Shown: positions 1 through 19,068 of the stretch, one piece after another
Layout of the letters: each line of letters opens with the position of its first letter
Position numbering within the stretch: the first letter of the stretch is position 1
Origin: Piromyces finnis finn
Taxonomy: Eukaryota > Fungi > Neocallimastigomycota
DNA length: 64,000 bases
Reading direction: 5' to 3'
Assembly (NCBI GenBank): GCA_002104945.1
Contig: MCFH01000023.1
Coordinates: 682,001-746,000 of the forward strand
The notes under the pieces: model-generated
Databases searched by the model: none
The model's input: only the letters and a program-made list of their open reading frames with translations
Told to the model about the DNA's origin: nothing
Translations under genes and position numbers: made by a program

Positions 1-1504
1 ATATGTTAAACTTGAACATGTTGTTTTAGATTTCAAAGGAACATTAAATTTTACTGATGAACTTTTTGAAATAACTGGTGATTGAGAACCTTTATTAATA
101 TGATTTAGTATATTTGGAATTAAATCATGAAATTCATCTTCTTCACCTTCGTCCTTTTATTATTTAATATTAAATATTAATATATAACAATATGTAATTA
201 AATATAATTAATATATATCATCCAATTAATTAAATTATAAATAATAAAATGTCTATTCAACATAAAAGAATGAAATAATAAAACTTATTTATATACATAT
301 TTTTTATTTTATTATATTAATCTATACTTACTTGAATTGATTGAAGGATTTCATCAATTGATATAGGCTTTGGAGCTGGCTTTTTTTCATATATTGCGGA
401 ATAAAAATCATTTTCTGTTGTTTTATATACAGATGGAATTCTTTCTCTTATAAATTTTGGGAATCTAATTAGATGCATTGTTTTTTTCCAAATTTCAGGT
501 GTAATTTTAAAATTTCTCCAATCAACATGAAGTGTACATTCTTCCATAATTAAATGTATATCTTTGATAACACCATCATTAATAAATTCAAAAACACTAT
601 CATCATCAACAGTCCTATAATCCAATGGTTTTAATTCTTTTAAATCAAGGAAATTTTTATTATTGCATGTAAATCCTTTGAAACCATATCCATTTAGCCA
701 TTTAATATAATAACGATCTCTAATATACTCTTCATGATGCTGTTGACGAACAGGCATTATTTCAATATCAAGAACAATAAAATCTGAACGAATAGTAATT
801 TCATTTTTTAATCTTTGAAGTAAATCTGGATAATCTGTTGTTAATGCATCTAAAGAAGTTTTCTGAGTACCATCTTCAAAAAAAACAGAATTTTTTAATA
901 CTACACCATTAATATATGTTTTAACCTTATTAAATAAATCTAAATTATCAAGATCTACTAATTTAACCATGCTTTGGAAGAAGCTAGTCATATCTGCTAA
1001 AAGTTGAACACATCCAGGAATTCCAAGATTTTCTTCTAGATATGAAAATTCAAAAAATACAATACCTTGAATAATACCTTGTGGTAATTCATTGGTTGTT
1101 TCTTTAACTAATTTTTTTAAATATTTAAAAAAATGACCTTTTGAATGTTTTTGATAGTCATTCCATTTTTCACGAACATTAATGGAAGTCAATACCATTT
1201 TATATGAAGATACAAAATCATAATAAGAAACATTTGGATTTTTATTTTCACTCATAAACTTTAAATTTTCATTATGTGAGTTTAAAAGTTTATCAATTGG
1301 TAAAATTAATAGGTCAATATTATTATTACCATTAATATAATTTAATTTTCCTAAATCCCCATTGTATACACCAAAACTCTGAATATTTTTTGAGTTAAAA
1401 AGTGGTGTTTTATATGCTAAAATATCATTTTTTCTATTACCATTGTTACCATTATTATTATTATTATTATTGTTGTTGTTGTTATCTTTCTTTTGTTTTG
1501 CCAT
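1..1504 (-). CDS. 5' part of a large protein that runs off the left edge; N-terminal GH114-like TIM-barrel domain of the fungal Gtb3/PelF-type GT4 proteins (tentative)
   Basis: ATG at 1504. The ORF-track stop at 317 lies inside an intron: there is a GTAAGT donor at 331 (after ...QSIQ) and an AG acceptor at 155-154, both phase 0. Exon 2 (153..1) reads DEGEEDEFHDLIPNILNHINKG... with no stop. The motifs QSFGVYNG, IDLLILP, INGVVLKNSVFFEDG, DFIVLDIE and KWLNGYG match my recollection of the N-terminal domain of large fungal GT4 proteins. Confidence 0.55.
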
Positions 1505-5864: not shown

Positions 5865-8800
5865 AACTAATTTTATAATTTTATTATTTATATCGATTGA
5901 ACGGTTTCTATGTCTAAATGGCCTTTGAGCTTGTGTCTATTATATATATAATTAAAACAAAAATTAATGAAAAAATATGTTATAGTATTTAATTATAATA
6001 TTCAATAATATTAATTTTCTAATATTTACATTTTTATTTATTATTTTTATAACTTCATTATTATTATTATTATCATTATTATTATTGTTATTGTTGCTGC
6101 TGTTGTTGTTAGTAATATTTATATTATCATTTATTTTATCATTAATATTATTTATACTATGCTTCGTATCAATTAAAGAAAATGAATCTACAAATTTATT
6201 TTTTTTTGTTTTAATTTTATCATTAATTTGTCGTTTTTGATAGATATTAACAAAATCTTGTTTTTGGTATATAATTGAATTATCAATATGAGATGGTAAT
6301 TGTTTAATTATATCATTGATTGAAATATCACCATTATTATTTATTTTTCTTATTGGTTTATTATTAATGGATGGTAATTGTGTTTTATTACCTAAATTAA
6401 ATTAAAACAAAAACAAAAACAAACAAACAAAAAAAAAAAAACATTAAAATAATTTTTAAAATAATTATTAATCTTCTTTTTTTTTTTATTTATCTGTATT
6501 TTGAATTACAATAAGTTTTATTAAGAGTTGTTTGTGATCTTCTAAAGGTATAAGATGATTTATTTGAAAGAAAATCTTTTAATTTTGATTCTATAAGTCT
6601 CTTAAAATATATTTCTTGATCATAAGAAGTTAAATTCTAATAACATAATTTATATTTATATTAATATTAGTAATGATTATATAGTAAGTAATTTCAAAAT
6701 ATTGTGATTTATTGGATTTTTTATACCTTATCTTTAACCATCATTTTCATTCTCATAATTATAATATATTTTAATTTTTTTAATAGTAAATTAGTACTTT
6801 TTTATATACTTCTATTTTAGAGATTAATTATATTATTCATATATAAATATTTACTTGCTAATTATTTCATCTAAGCTATCGGATTCGTATATTTGAATTG
6901 GTCTTGATTCAGGAAATTTATCAAATTTTTCATTAATTTCAACAGTATAACTAGAACAATCATAATCCTCCTCCTCCTCTTCTTTATTATTGTCATTGTT
7001 AATTTCATCCACTCCTGCTAACTGGTCTTTATATTCCTCTATATTTTCTTCCAAATGATCCAAAATTTGTTTTTTATCAATAAAATCTTTTATTTCTTTC
7101 TTTGTTCGTTTATTTTTATGTTCATCATATACTTTTACAAAGGGGTAGTTATTATTTTCTGGATAGAATAAGAAAAAGGATGTCATCATATTAACCATGT
7201 CCTGTAATCGGATTGCTCTGTTTATTAAATCAATATCACTATTTAATTTTTTATAATTATTTGTCAACTAATATTTTAATAAATAATATTTTATATATTA
7301 GTTTATTTTTTAATTTTTATCATAAAATAATATTTTTTACAAGTATATATTAATTTCCAAATTATAGAATTTATACCATTTTTTGTAAAACTAATTTACT
7401 TTTTGTTTCACTTTCTTCCATGAGTTTATTATTGTCGTTAGTATATTCTTCTTTACTGTTATTTAAACTTCTCATTGAACTTAAGTTAGAACTATTTTCT
7501 TCCATTATTATTTCTCTTTTTAACATTGTAACCTTATCACTAATCTTATTATCATTTGATATATTTTTTGAGTTTTTACTTTTATTGGTTTTCTTCAAAA
7601 TAGAAGAGCGACTAGAATGATTATCATTATCATTTATATTTAAATTGTCCTCTTGATTATCCAATACTTTATTTTTTTCATTTTTTTCATCATCCTTTTC
7701 TTCAACTCTTTCTTTTAATTTATCATTAATTGTCTTTTTTCCATTAATAATTTTGAAAGTTTCCATGTTATTTTTCTCAACATCCCTAAAAATTTCATTT
7801 TCGATCATTTTATCAATATTTACATTCATATCGCTTGGTACTTTATTTTAATAGATGAAACAATAAATTATTGTCAATATTATAAAATAGGTAATCCTAC
7901 AAAATAAGTATATATAAATTAAATTTAATTTTTAATAATTACATTTTTTTTGTGCAATTAACCATTTCATTACTTGCTGATTAGTTTTGTTCTTTTTACC
8001 AATAAGTTTTTCAATTTCAGATAACAAGTTATTTGCTGTTTTTAATTTTGCGTTTCTTTGAACTAACATTTGGTTTTCAGATAATAAACTCATAGTTTTT
8101 TCAGACATTTTTTTTAATTGAGAATTTATAATAATGTTTTCTTGAATTGCCCTTTTTGTTGTCTTATATATATAATAATATTTATATTATTAAATATTAA
8201 TACATCTAATTTAAATAAATACTTTTTAATACCTCTGCAATCTGTTGGTCTGCAACTTTCTGAAAATTAAGAACAACTTCATTAACCTTTTGCAACATTT
8301 CTTTTCTTAGTTTTGTCTATTTAGATAATATAATATATAAAATATTATATATTATGTTTTTATTTTTATATGTATACTATATATATTTATTTATTATGCC
8401 TATATTTTTATATTTAATATTACTTTATCCTGTAACATTTTCTTTTCCATATTATATATAGTCTTTTTATATTCTTCTTCATTATCAATAATTGTCTTTT
8501 TTAAAGTTTCAATTTCTGCTTCCATTTTTTTCTGTTATATAAAAATTATATTTATTTGCGTTTTAATTTTTAAATTGAAAAGTAAACTTAATAATAGTTT
8601 ATATATTATATTCAACTATTTACTTTATTTATTTTAAATTGGTTCAGTTCGTCCAATTCTGATTTATATTTTGTATTTTGAAAATTTAGATTTTCAACTA
8701 CTACATCATGTTCTTGTTTTAATTTTTCTAATTCCATTCGTATATATTATCAATTAAATTATATAAAATAATTTAAAATTATTTGTAGTAAGCTATAATT

Positions 8801-17250: not shown

Positions 17251-19068
17251 TTAAACATTTGGCCGCCCATCCCGATTTTCACTATAAATATTTTGAAAAT
17301 TTCCTTGATTATTCATATTTGGTATTTGAGTAGATATATTATAATATTGTTGTTGATATTGAGCTTGCGGCATTTGTTTAATTTCTTGAAATTGTGGATT
17401 AATTATATCATTAGTATAAGCTGGTATTGCACCAATACTATTAGTTTGTGTAGCATATACTGTTTGAATTTGAGGGTTAGTTACTGCAATAAATTGAGAT
17501 TTCCCTCCAATATTATTTGATATATTTGCAGTAGCATATGTAATGGTACCCGGTGGAGAACTTTGCGTATTAGGATTTTGTAAATTATTCATCATTGGAT
17601 TAGCTACATTCTGGGTATTTGTAGGTTGCATTGGTGGTGACATTTGTGTTCCAATTTGAGGTTGTTGTATATTTATATTTTGGGTTGTCATTTGAGCTTG
17701 AATTGGTTGTTGAATTTGTATAGGTGGTTGGATTTGAGCCTGAATAGTGTTTTGAATTGGTTGTGTCGTAGCTTGGATTTGTAGTGGTAGAGTTGTATTT
17801 GGTTGCTGAACATTTAATATAATTGGTGGACTTGATTGAACTGATGGTTGTTGTATATGCATTTGACTCATACCTTGAGTTAATTTATAGTCATAAGGAT
17901 TATAAATTTGGGTAGTAACTGGTTTTTGAAATTCATATTCATAGATTCTAGTTGGTTGTTGTATATTACCATATTCATTAATACTTGAAATTGAACTACC
18001 TCTTGATAAGTTACTAGATATATTACTGGAAGATAAAGAATTAGAAGACCAACTGTACACTGACAAATTGGTGCTTGAAGTAGATGCAGAACTACATGCA
18101 GAATAAGCTAAAGAACCTGAATTACTACTACTGTATAATGGATCATCAAATGTAGTTTGTAATGGATTAATCATAGCATAGGAATTCATATTTTGAGTTC
18201 CTTGAGCTAATGTATTAATAATACTCTGTTCTTGGGAAGGAGAACTAATATTATCAATCCATTGTCTGATATTCTCATGATTTTTATCTTGGTGTGGAGG
18301 ATTATCAAATTCATGTTTTAATGGATGATTTTCCTCGAATTTTTTGTTTTCTTCATTTAACTTTTTCTTTCTACGATTCTTTGAAGCCCTTGGAGTATAT
18401 TTATATCCTGGATTAGCTAACATATGTCTTTTTGCTTCTTCTTTAGCTCTTTGGTGGTAAATTTCTTTAACTTCTGGAGGTTCCTCTCTCCACATTTTTG
18501 CAATGATTTTTGAAATATCATTATTAGCTATACCAGGATTTTTTGCAGAAATAAGTTGATGTTTTTCACGTCTATATATAATGAAACAATTTTGAGGCCT
18601 TGGGATCTTAGATGGATTTCTACTTCTTTTCTTTTTTGTATTTGCTGTTAATGGGATTTCTGGATAACTTGTTTGTGTTGGATTTATTCCGTCAGTACTA
18701 CTTGTGGTAATATTAGAGTTTTCATTATTTAATCCTATATCATTTTCCACATCCTTTCCTTTTCCTGTTGATGTAATATTTTGTAAATTGTTTGTTGCTA
18801 AATTTTCATTATTTGAAATATTAAATGTAGTTGCCATACTATCATTTGGTTTTTGATAAAATGTGTATGATTCCCCAATATTATCCAATGAATTTGGTAA
18901 AACAGTTGATATCTTTATATCATCAATTAAATTTGTGGTTTTTGGAATAGTTGATTGAACTTGTTGATTTATATACTTTTGATTATATAAATCATTTTGA
19001 TTATTTTGACTAATTGTTGTTGGTGTGGTTGCTGTTGTATTAATATTATTTACTGCATTAGAGGACAT
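17251..19068 (-). CDS. Intronless HMG-box transcription factor (MATA_HMG / Sox-like class) with Ser-rich and Gln/Pro-rich activation-type regions
   Basis: 605-aa ORF containing KIPRPQNCFIIYRREKH...NNDISKIIAKMWREEPPEVKEIYHQRAKEEAKRHMLANPGYKYTPR, a complete sequence-specific HMG box. Confidence 0.93.
   Translation of the reverse strand: MSSNAVNNINTTATTPTTISQNNQNDLYNQKYINQQVQSTIPKTTNLIDDIKISTVLPNSLDNIGESYTFYQKPNDSMATTFNISNNENLATNNLQNITSTGKGKDVENDIGLNNENSNITTSSTDGINPTQTSYPEIPLTANTKKKRSRNPSKIPRPQNCFIIYRREKHQLISAKNPGIANNDISKIIAKMWREEPPEVKEIYHQRAKEEAKRHMLANPGYKYTPRASKNRRKKKLNEENKKFEENHPLKHEFDNPPHQDKNHENIRQWIDNISSPSQEQSIINTLAQGTQNMNSYAMINPLQTTFDDPLYSSSNSGSLAYSACSSASTSSTNLSVYSWSSNSLSSSNISSNLSRGSSISSINEYGNIQQPTRIYEYEFQKPVTTQIYNPYDYKLTQGMSQMHIQQPSVQSSPPIILNVQQPNTTLPLQIQATTQPIQNTIQAQIQPPIQIQQPIQAQMTTQNINIQQPQIGTQMSPPMQPTNTQNVANPMMNNLQNPNTQSSPPGTITYATANISNNIGGKSQFIAVTNPQIQTVYATQTNSIGAIPAYTNDIINPQFQEIKQMPQAQYQQQYYNISTQIPNMNNQGNFQNIYSENRDGRPNV

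What the first reader, a model, noticed from the sequence alone, without database searches (positions are those of the whole stretch)
1..1504. Candidate galactosaminogalactan/Pel-type exopolysaccharide synthase (Gtb3-like) in an anaerobic gut fungus
Seen: the 395-aa 'orphan' ORF is exon 1 of a longer gene that splices in phase (331 to 154) and leaves the window; it has no signal peptide. From memory of the family: SFGVY.G, DLLI..P, G.vl.N..f..dG, DF.v and W..y.G in this order match the GH114-like N-terminal barrel of the very large fungal GT4 proteins related to Aspergillus Gtb3 and bacterial PelF. Established: galactosaminogalactan is a biofilm adhesin described mainly in Pezizomycotina. Inference: gut fungi may make a similar adhesive polymer for colonising plant fibre. 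The GT4 domain itself is not visible in this window.
Basis: partly seen in the sequence, partly recalled or inferred. Interest (0 to 1): 0.75.

Follow-up and report, generated by a model that had tools for sequence, protein, structure and literature searches.

The report
Gtb3-like polysaccharide synthase, first exon
The "orphan" ORF at the left edge of the window is the first exon of a roughly 2,840-residue membrane glycosyltransferase of the Gtb3/PelF kind. It encodes a barrel domain whose nearest known folds are the enzymes that cut galactosamine polymers, so this gut fungus probably makes a Pel- or galactosaminogalactan-like sticky polymer.

Summary
ORF 1504..317 (-) is exon 1 of a four-exon gene of about 2,838 aa that leaves the window. 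All three introns are GT..AG and phase 0. Each exon aligns in order with intronless paralogs and with full-length relatives.

Exon 4 carries DUF3492 plus Glycos_transf_1 and passes NCBI's PelF equivalog cut-off. Exon 3 holds about 12 membrane helices.

Exon 1 has no sequence-level family hit and no GH114 profile match. Its AlphaFold model is a (beta/alpha)8 barrel. In an exhaustive search of 48,161 chains, the six best matches are exactly the alpha-1,4-galactosaminidase families: GH191 and PelA/GH166 (Z 12-13), then GH114 (Z 10).

The same domain is homologous (hhalign 93%) to the N-terminus of Pezizomycotina Gtb3 orthologs, one of which sits in a complete GAG cluster. A separate model of that domain gives the same top hits.

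The locus is not clustered. The genome does hold 3 such synthases, about 17 Agd3/CE18 genes and about 24 GH114 genes, but no Sph3.

The barrel is predicted to be cytosolic and keeps an Asp/Asn/Glu set at strand ends. The polymer itself is untested, and no RNA evidence could be obtained. Other notes of this scan flagged the paralog and the Agd3/GH114 genes on other DNA of this genome.

The parts
332..1504 (-). Exon 1 (391 codons, ATG at 1504): poly-Asn N-terminus followed by the N-terminal (beta/alpha)8 barrel domain
   Evidence: ORF. Donor directly after codon 391. The paralog tblastn match ends at 332. AF2 model.
605..1222 (-). Well-modelled barrel core, residues ~95-300, the part aligned to GH191/PelA/GH114 structures
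   Evidence: pLDDT is mostly 70-95 over residues 100-300. VIA-align model ranges are 94-299. hhalign matches Gtb3-type N-termini over residues 96-318.
953..955 (-). Codon of Asp184, at the C-terminal end of strand 180-184; candidate equivalent of the nucleophile Asp of GH114/166/191
   Evidence: D or E in 14 of the 15 rows aligned at this column (one row has a gap here). The correspondence with Ega3 D189 comes from strand order, not from a residue-level superposition.
890..892 (-). Codon of Asn205, at the end of strand 200-204 (motif LKN, as in GH114 GLKN)
   Evidence: N, D or S in all rows. Ega3 and the genome's own GH114 carry GLKN on the strand between the two catalytic strands.
761..763 (-). 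Codon of Glu248, at the end of strand 243-249; candidate equivalent of the acid/base Glu
   Evidence: E in 15 of 16 rows. D or E in all 15 Pezizomycotina rows at the hhalign-equivalent position. It lies 64 residues after Asp184, against 58-69 in the solved enzymes.
1439..1483 (-). Poly-Asn low-complexity tract (residues ~8-22)
   Evidence: Translation. Its DNA resembles more than 100 other AAT/AAC-rich loci of the genome.
154..331 (-). Intron 1 (178 nt, GTAAGT...AG, phase 0, in-frame stop at 317-319)
   Evidence: Sequence. The close relative P0001 also reads on for only three codons past the conserved Gln of the exon end.
1..153 (-). Start of exon 2. The gene continues left of the window: exon 2 to window -1043; intron 2 of 93 nt; exon 3 (872 aa, ~12 TM helices) -1137..-3752; intron 3 of 103 nt; exon 4 (1176 aa, DUF3492 + GT4/PelF) -3856..-7383; then TAA.
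   Evidence: Flanking DNA was fetched as L004 = G000:C146:672501-682400. Frames and junctions. Pfam, NCBIfam, hydropathy.

Best explanation
The ORF is exon 1 of a ~2,838-aa integral-membrane polysaccharide synthase of the Gtb3 type.

Architecture, shown here:
- An N-terminal (beta/alpha)8 barrel (exon 1).
- A ~400-aa domain of unknown fold (exon 2).
- Two blocks of six membrane helices separated by a conserved ~140-aa loop (exon 3).
- A ~600-aa unassigned region followed by a PelF-type GT-B glycosyltransferase, DUF3492 + Glycos_transf_1 (exon 4).

Mechanism, inferred:
- The cytosolic GT4 domain polymerises a UDP-activated hexosamine, most likely UDP-GalNAc, into an alpha-1,4-linked chain.
- The 12-helix block passes the chain across the membrane.
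- Outside the cell, the genome's many Agd3-type CE18 deacetylases make it cationic and adhesive, and its many GH114 enzymes trim it.

Role of the barrel, more weakly inferred:
- The barrel belongs structurally to the GH191/GH166/GH114 group of alpha-galactosaminidases.
- It lies on the same (cytosolic) side as the GT4 domain and keeps an Asp...Asn...Glu set at the ends of three successive strands.
- It therefore most likely binds the nascent alpha-1,4-GalNAc chain at the cytosolic face, and may cleave or transfer it, rather than trimming secreted polymer.
For: Gene model:
- Canonical phase-0 introns.
- Colinearity with intronless paralogs and with more than 40 full-length relatives.

GT4 domain:
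- PF11997 at 1.3e-13, PF00534 at 2.4e-18.
- NF038011 PelF at 101.4 bits against a cut-off of 100.

Gtb3 kinship:
- Exon 3 matches P0068 at 20% identity over 824 aa, E 2e-13. Exon 4 matches at 31% over 802 aa, E 2e-110.
- Exon 4 matches P0098 at 30% over 821 aa, E 1e-104.
- P0098 lies beside Agd3, GH114, Spherulin4 and an epimerase.
- The N-terminal profiles match at 93% probability, E 3.4e-7, over 203 columns.

Barrel:
- AF2 model, pLDDT 70.5 overall with the core at 70-95.
- Foldseek top hits are GH191 and PelA, E 1e-5.
- VIA-align Z 13.4-12.2, rmsd 3.1-3.5, 179-188 residues aligned.
- In the exhaustive search the top 6 of 48,161 chains are GH191, PelA and GH114.
- ESM Atlas top rows are PF03537 clusters.
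- An independent model of the Pezizomycotina domain gives GH191 at Z 16.0-15.1 and PelA at 14.5.

Conserved acidic set: read against the catalytic pairs in PMC12054363.

Topology:
- 12 hydrophobic segments conserved across the family, and no N-terminal TM.
- A K/R-rich stretch directly precedes TM1.
- A K/R-rich stretch follows the extra N-terminal helix of Pezizomycotina proteins.

Partner enzymes: about 17 PF25115 loci with E down to 9e-91 and about 24 PF03537 loci.
Against: - There is no biochemical or RNA evidence. GT4 is a very broad family, and identity to Gtb3 in the GT region is only ~30%.
- The PelF score is barely over its cut-off.
- The locus is not in a GAG-type cluster, and no Spherulin4/Sph3, which is essential in Aspergillus, was found. 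That family's control search rang nowhere, so the absence is weakly shown.
- Exon 1 has no sequence-level relation to GH114: Pfam gives none at E<=10 and hhalign gives 0.2%.
- Partial-barrel radical-SAM enzymes reach Z ~10, so the fold margin is about 2-3 Z units.
- The first two strands of the barrel are modelled at low confidence (pLDDT ~50).
- The catalytic-residue mapping rests on strand order, not on a superposition.
- The topology rests on a crude hydropathy scan.
- At least one GH114 carries CBM10 dockerins. Part of the GH114/CE18 expansion could therefore target other microbes' Pel-like polymers rather than the fungus's own.
Confidence: 0.72

Rival explanations
1. The protein is a giant GT4 synthase of the same architecture, but it makes a different polymer (for example another hexosamine or glucose polymer). 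The barrel is then only a generic TIM-barrel scaffold with no link to galactosamine chemistry.
For: GT4 specificity cannot be read from sequence. Identity to Gtb3 is ~30%. There is no cluster and no Sph3. Generic barrels score Z 8-10.
Against: Of 48,161 representative chains, the six best are all alpha-1,4-GalN(Ac) polymer hydrolases. The same holds for an independent model from a subfamily that matches this one only at profile level (about 15% identity in the hhalign alignment). The only GT4 equivalog passed is PelF. The genome is unusually rich in CE18 and GH114, both specific for this polymer class.
Confidence: 0.18
2. The barrel is a catalytically dead relic that serves only as a structural or regulatory module of the synthase.
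For: There is no detectable sequence similarity to active families. A cytosolic location gives a hydrolase no obvious substrate other than the nascent chain.
Against: Acidic residues at the ends of the strands that carry the catalytic Asp and Glu in GH114 are kept in both subfamilies, with matching spacing (64 against 58-69). The Asn on the strand between them is also kept.
Confidence: 0.4
3. ORF 317..1504 is an independent orphan gene that ends at its own stop codon, and the downstream GT4 gene starts elsewhere.
For: The ORF has its own stop codon. A 385-aa product of a relative was called as a separate protein in metagenome data. There is no RNA evidence.
Against: Paralogs and relatives encode the same domain fused in one reading frame to the rest of the protein. 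The paralog match stops exactly at the GTAAGT donor. The 385-aa call comes from prokaryote-style gene calling that cannot see introns.
Confidence: 0.03

Closest known systems
Gtb3 (AFUA_3G07860 type), the putative galactosaminogalactan synthase of Pezizomycotina and Trichosporonales
   Same: Size (~300 kDa, PMC9860509). The order of parts: N-terminal barrel, middle domain, ~12 TM helices, DUF3492 + GT4. Colinear homology across all of these parts.
   Different: Only 15-31% identity. It lacks the extra N-terminal membrane helix of the Pezizomycotina proteins. It is not in a five-gene cluster. No Sph3 was found in the genome. There are three paralogs, and this copy has introns.
PelF, the cytosolic GT4 of the bacterial Pel system
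   Same: The DUF3492 + Glycos_transf_1 architecture. The NF038011 equivalog cut-off is passed over model positions 4-426 of 489.
   Different: PelF is a soluble protein (the NF038011 model is 489 positions long) that, from general knowledge of the Pel system, works with separate membrane proteins PelD/E/G. Here the GT4 domain is the C-terminus of a 2,838-aa membrane protein. Exon 3 matches no Pfam family at all and no Pel membrane component in NCBIfam.
GH191 (TM1410), GH166 (PelA hydrolase domain) and GH114 (Ega3): retaining endo-alpha-1,4-(N-acetyl)galactosaminidases
   Same: The (beta/alpha)8 fold, with these as the best structural matches. Acidic residues at the ends of the corresponding strands, with similar spacing.
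   Different: No sequence-level similarity. Predicted to be cytosolic and fused to a synthase, whereas the known enzymes are secreted, periplasmic or membrane-anchored outside. Activity is unknown.
Fungal alpha-1,3-glucan synthase Ags1/Mok1 (from general knowledge, not tested here)
   Same: It also combines a glycoside-hydrolase-fold domain, a GT-B synthase domain and a multi-helix membrane block in one giant polypeptide.
   Different: The families differ (GH13 + GT5). Its GH domain is extracellular, behind a signal peptide. It is not homologous.

Membership tests
Gtb3-type exopolysaccharide synthase | Giant (~300 kDa) multi-pass membrane protein with a C-terminal DUF3492 + GT4 domain | tested here: met
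   2,838 aa summed over four exons. About 12 TM segments. PF11997 + PF00534 in exon 4.
Gtb3-type exopolysaccharide synthase | Full-length colinear homology to a Gtb3 ortholog defined by synteny with agd3, ega3, sph3 and uge3 | tested here: met
   P0098 lies in a complete cluster. Exon 4 matches it at E 1e-104. Exons 2, 3 and 4 match its relative P0068 in order. The N-terminal profile match is 93%. Exons were compared one by one; the joined protein was not searched.
Gtb3-type exopolysaccharide synthase | Gene lies in the five-gene GAG cluster | tested here: not met
   There are no PF25115, PF03537, PF12138 or PF01370 matches on contig C146. The neighbours are LIM-domain, HMG-box and other unrelated ORFs.
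Gtb3-type exopolysaccharide synthase | Genome encodes the partner enzymes Agd3 (CE18), Ega3 (GH114), Sph3 (GH135) and Uge3 | tested here: inconclusive
   About 17 Agd3 loci and about 24 GH114 loci are present. No Spherulin4 was found, but that search rang in no control genome. Epimerase-family genes are present, but Uge3 orthology was not tested.
Gtb3-type exopolysaccharide synthase | Product is an alpha-1,4 Gal/GalNAc polymer | not testable with these tools
   This needs carbohydrate analysis of cultures.
PelF (NCBIfam NF038011 equivalog) | Score over the curated equivalog cut-off | tested here: met
   101.4 bits against 100, E 6.2e-29, residues 615-1064 of exon 4. This is a marginal pass.
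PelF (NCBIfam NF038011 equivalog) | Stand-alone soluble protein encoded in a pel operon | tested here: not met
   Here the domain is the C-terminal part of a eukaryotic membrane protein.
GH114 / Pfam PF03537 superfamily (includes GH191 and GH166 relatives) | Sequence match to the family profile | tested here: not met
   No Pfam hit at E<=10. No PDB sequence hit. hhalign against the genome's own GH114 genes gives 0.2%.
GH114 / Pfam PF03537 superfamily (includes GH191 and GH166 relatives) | (beta/alpha)8 barrel closest to solved members | tested here: met
   Z is 13.2-12.2 for GH191/PelA and 10.4-10.1 for GH114. These are the top six of 48,161 chains. Foldseek, VIA-align and the Atlas agree, as does a second model.
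GH114 / Pfam PF03537 superfamily (includes GH191 and GH166 relatives) | Catalytic Asp (nucleophile) and Glu (acid/base) at the C-terminal ends of two strands | tested here: inconclusive
   Asp184 and Glu248 are conserved, correctly ordered and correctly spaced. No residue-level superposition was available.

The most novel reading that the evidence does not exclude
Gtb3-type synthases, including Aspergillus Gtb3, carry a second, catalytically competent active site: a GH166/GH191-like retaining barrel on the cytosolic face that cuts or transfers the nascent alpha-1,4-GalNAc chain. This would bear on the open question of whether Gtb3 acts as a single transferase. The whole synthase, together with the CE18 and GH114 toolkit, would be an ancient opisthokont system (present in chytrids, Neocallimastigomycota, Ichthyosporea and Corallochytrium) rather than a Pezizomycotina invention. 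Anaerobic gut fungi would use it to make a cationic adhesin for plant fibre.
Probability: 0.2. Interest if true: 0.8.

Novelty: new member of a known kind. Interest (0 to 1): 0.58.

Why it matters
Galactosaminogalactan and Pel are the model cationic biofilm adhesins. The fungal synthase Gtb3 is still uncharacterised, and a 2023 review states that it had not been modelled (PMC9860509). The cluster was described as confined to Pezizomycotina plus Trichosporon (PMC4817252).

This locus shows three things:
- Anaerobic gut fungi hold full-length Gtb3-type synthases alongside their known GH114 and Agd3 expansions. That turns an earlier speculation (PMC6054980) into a testable pathway for attachment to plant fibre.
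- The family reaches chytrids and unicellular relatives of animals.
- The family's N-terminus is a barrel of the same structural group as the hydrolases that act on this polymer. This gives concrete residues to mutate in any tractable Gtb3.

None of this is proven biochemically.

Tried and rejected
- Sequence-level assignment of exon 1 failed everywhere: Pfam, NCBIfam, PDB by phmmer and by profile, and hhalign against GH114.
- The word search with exon 1 found only one 385-aa fragment, so the exhaustive HMMER search was used.
- BLASTP of exon 1 against a Pezizomycotina Gtb3-type protein, and a profile against that single sequence, gave nothing. Only profile against profile worked.
- RNA evidence could not be obtained.
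These were dropped and not reused.
- The ESM Atlas feature search gave no usable lead for exon 2 or for the first 615 residues of exon 4. Exon 3 matched no Pfam family at all, so no PelG-type family was detected in it. These parts stay unassigned.
- The joined four-exon protein was never built or searched. Exons were searched singly by reference, and full-length questions were put to the intronless paralog L013.
- The idea that a hydrophobic stretch at residues 40-58 of exon 4 is a 13th membrane helix was rejected, because it is not a hydrophobic peak in the family.
- A rooted tree with bacterial PelF was considered. It was not run, because the shared 2,800-aa architecture already argues for one eukaryotic family.
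Full report
**The observation**

The window is extremely AT-rich (10-25% G+C), as in anaerobic gut fungi. On the minus strand, ORF 1504..317 encodes 395 aa. Directly after codon 391 stands GTAAGT, with the intron starting at 331. An AG ends at 154, and from 153 the same phase stays open to base 1.

The window is G000:C146:682001-746000. I fetched the DNA to its left as L004. The reading frame continues through two more GT..AG, phase-0 introns of 93 and 103 nt, to a TAA 7.4 kb left of the window. The exons encode 391, 399, 872 and 1176 aa, 2,838 in all.

The genome holds two intronless paralogs of 2,907 and 2,959 aa. tblastn of these against the unspliced genomic DNA stops exactly at window 332, resumes at window 24, and covers the other exons in order. 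Exon-by-exon BLASTP puts the four exons end to end on more than 40 full-length relatives; on P0026 they cover 3-400, 443-811, 812-1686 and 1691-2856.

Exon 1 has no hydrophobic segment, so it has no signal peptide.
- The first ~40 residues of exon 2 are an unconserved acidic linker, so the precise acceptor is inferred.
I worked beside those places and sent none of their letters to any search afterwards.

The joined protein was not assembled or searched. Exons were handled singly, by reference.

**What the gene is**

Exon 4 carries DUF3492 (E 1.3e-13) and Glycos_transf_1 (E 2.4e-18). It passes NCBI's PelF equivalog cut-off, narrowly: 101.4 against 100 bits.

Exon 3 has two groups of six hydrophobic helices, separated by a conserved ~140-residue loop. 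The same twelve peaks appear in the family-averaged hydropathy profile. No family member of the chytrid type has an N-terminal membrane helix. Exons 1-3 match no Pfam family above its cut-off.

An exhaustive HMMER search with exon 1 against 1.84 billion representatives found only 13 proteins. Nine are 2.6-3.3 kaa proteins; the named ones come from Anaeromyces, several chytrids and the ichthyosporean Creolimax. All the full-length ones scanned carry DUF3492 + GT4.

A word search with the full-length paralog extended the family to:
- Neocallimastix and Orpinomyces;
- many Chytridiomycota, and Gonapodya;
- Sphaeroforma;
- two EukProt entries (Ihof_, Clim_) whose prefixes I read, unverified, as Ichthyophonus and Corallochytrium;
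- more weakly, large GT4 proteins of Pezizomycotina.

**Link to Gtb3**

The Pezizomycotina proteins form a family that includes Neurospora, Fusarium, Venturia, Aureobasidium, Penicillium and the basidiomycete Vanrija.

- One member, P0098 of Fusarium redolens, lies next to genes for Agd3 (CBM87 + CE18 + C-terminal domain), GH114, Spherulin4 and an epimerase. That is the full canonical galactosaminogalactan cluster, so P0098 is a Gtb3 ortholog by synteny.
- Another member, P0068, lies next to an epimerase.
- Our exon 4 matches these at 30-31% identity over ~800 residues, E 1e-104 to 2e-110.
- Exon 3 matches at 20% over 824 residues, E 2e-13.
- Exon 2 matches weakly, in the right place, E 1e-5.

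Gtb3 is described as a ~300 kDa transmembrane glycosyltransferase that had not yet been modelled (PMC9860509).

**Exon 1 itself**

By sequence, exon 1 is not GH114:
- No Pfam hit at E<=10.
- No PDB sequence hit.
- hhalign probability of 0.2% against the genome's own GH114 genes.

An AlphaFold model built on 16 family sequences has mean pLDDT 70.5, with residues 100-300 mostly at 70-95. It shows eight alternating strands and helices.

| Search | Result |
|---|---|
| Foldseek, PDB | Top hits GH191 (TM1410) and the PelA hydrolase domain, E 1e-5 to 1e-4 |
| VIA-align, second look | Z 13.4-12.2 for those (rmsd 3.1-3.5, 179-188 aligned); Ega3 10.1; best unrelated fold, NifB, 10.4 |
| VIA-align, exhaustive (48,161 representative chains) | Top six are GH191 (13.2, 12.8), PelA (12.7, 12.2) and GH114 (10.4, 10.1); everything else at or below 9.9 |
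| ESM Atlas, shape search | Top row is a "bifunctional GH114/polysaccharide deacetylase" (PelA-like) cluster; three more PF03537 clusters in the top ten |

The margin over generic barrels is only 2-3 Z units. What carries weight is that every structurally known family acting on this polymer class, except GH135, heads the list.

**The domain is shared with true Gtb3**

A profile of our N-terminal domain matches a profile of the Pezizomycotina N-termini. The probability is 93% and the E-value 3.4e-7 over 203 columns, with exon 1 residues 96-318 aligned to P0068 residues 178-383.

An independent AlphaFold model of P0068 residues 1-520 has a membrane helix at 47-82 followed by an eight-stranded barrel. 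It again finds GH191 (Z 16.0-15.1) and PelA (14.5) first, then GH18 chitinases (13.3) and Ega3 (12.5).

Two subfamilies that match each other only at profile level therefore converge on the same structural neighbours.

**Possible active site (inference)**

The solved enzymes use an Asp nucleophile and a Glu acid/base at strand ends. Examples are Ega3 D189/E247 and TmGH191 D156/E225, with 58-69 residues between the two (PMC12054363). Aligning one of the genome's own GH114 proteins to Ega3 places these residues in the motifs D-P-D-N-V-D and V-N-E, with G-L-K-N on the strand between them.

In exon 1, the six strands inside the aligned range follow the same order. The third, fourth and fifth end in:

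| Residue | Conservation in the family |
|---|---|
| Asp184 | D or E in 14 of the 15 rows aligned there (one row has a gap) |
| Asn205, in L-K-N | N, D or S in all rows |
| Glu248 | E in 15 of 16 rows |

Asp184 and Glu248 are 64 residues apart. In the Pezizomycotina alignment, an Asp after the corresponding strand, the Asn of the conserved E-N motif, and a D/E in F-x-D/E are likewise kept.

This mapping comes from strand order, not from a superposition, which the tools did not offer.

**Topology (inference)**

- There are twelve helices between the N-terminal half and the GT4 domain.
- A K/R-rich stretch directly precedes the first helix, and the central loop is K/R-rich.
- A strongly K/R-rich stretch follows the extra N-terminal helix of the Pezizomycotina proteins.

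All three place the barrel on the cytosolic side, together with the GT4 domain. It therefore cannot work like secreted Ega3 or periplasmic PelA. It is more likely to hold, cut or transfer the nascent chain.

**Genomic context**

The locus is not a cluster. No Agd3, GH114, Spherulin4 or epimerase-family match lies on contig C146, and the neighbours are unrelated.

Genome-wide there are:
- three synthase genes;
- about 17 Agd3-type loci, some with the full CBM87 + CE18 + C-terminal architecture;
- about 24 GH114 loci, at least one of them with three CBM10 dockerin modules.

Spherulin4/Sph3 was not found, but that search rang in no control genome either, so its absence is only weakly shown.

**Literature**

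- GH114 is known to be among the most abundant CAZy families of anaerobic fungi, and a role for a galactosaminogalactan was suggested in 2018 (PMC6054980).
- Agd3 homologs in "anaerobic herbivore symbiotes" and Gonapodya were noted in 2020 (PMC7229062).
- The cluster itself was reported only from Pezizomycotina and Trichosporon (PMC4817252).
- I found no paper in the held library that links Gtb3 to a barrel domain of its own, or that mentions DUF3492 in fungi. This does not prove novelty.
- Other first-stage notes of this scan flagged the 8,880-nt paralog, Agd3 pairs and a GH114/CE18 neighbourhood in the same genome. My searches found these independently.

**Verdict**

Exon 1 encodes the N-terminal barrel of a Gtb3/PelF-type synthase, and the barrel belongs structurally with the alpha-galactosaminidase families.

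It is a new member of a known kind. It carries one general by-product: the same barrel is present in bona fide Gtb3 orthologs, with a conserved acidic pair. It also carries an evolutionary point: the family is older than Dikarya.

The identity of the polymer, any activity of the barrel and its topology remain to be tested.

Noticed in passing
G000:C200:1152714-1161437 (L013:714-9437) and G000:C200:1202348-1211227 (L014:348-9227): There are two intronless paralogs of the synthase (2,907 and 2,959 aa), about 50 kb apart on another contig. The copy in this window has three introns. Identity to our exons is 31/40/45/59% for L013.
   Followed up: partly
L004:8925-9125 (exon 2 residues 177-243) and L004:5915-6155 (exon 3 residues ~737-816): A module of about 70-80 residues, containing a conserved His and acidic motif, occurs once before and once after the 12-helix block (29% identity, E 2e-4). 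This may be an internal duplication flanking the membrane domain. Its function is unknown.
   Followed up: partly
Exon 3 residues ~255-394 (L004 about 7180-7600): The loop between helices 6 and 7 holds the most invariant stretch of the membrane half, a K-K-x(3)-E-K-x-N-R-G motif that is invariant in 11 full-length relatives. No explanation was found.
   Followed up: no
L012:1618-2772 (G000:C200:865450-866604): A GH114 gene carries three CBM10 dockerin modules. At least part of the GH114 expansion is therefore probably associated with the cellulosome.
   Followed up: partly
window 1423-1500: The DNA that encodes the poly-Asn tract resembles more than 100 other loci of the genome (75-90% identity). 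This is a common AAT/AAC low-complexity coding repeat, not a sign of a mobile element.
   Followed up: no
No conclusion was drawn, and the letters were not sent to any search afterwards.
   Followed up: no
L004:167-787 (about 8.7-9.3 kb left of the window start, minus strand): The next gene downstream looks like a LIM/zinc-finger protein with Cys-rich repeats. It is unrelated to polysaccharide synthesis.
   Followed up: no
window 17251-19068: This is a 605-aa ORF with an HMG-box-like basic region. Another first-stage finding (s1-186152) already noted it. It was not examined here.
   Followed up: no
P0012, P0056 (named sources); P0045, P0058 (EukProt ids only): Full-length family members occur outside fungi: Creolimax and Sphaeroforma, plus two EukProt entries (Ihof_, Clim_) that I read, unverified, as Ichthyophonus and Corallochytrium. 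P0050 (Siphonaria) is a gene model fused to a transportin, which is probably an annotation merge.
   Followed up: partly
G000 as a whole: The assembly is 56.46 Mb in 232 contigs. From memory, this matches the published Piromyces finnis assembly. The nearest named relatives of the paralog are Neocallimastix proteins at 74-79% identity. This was not verified.
   Followed up: no
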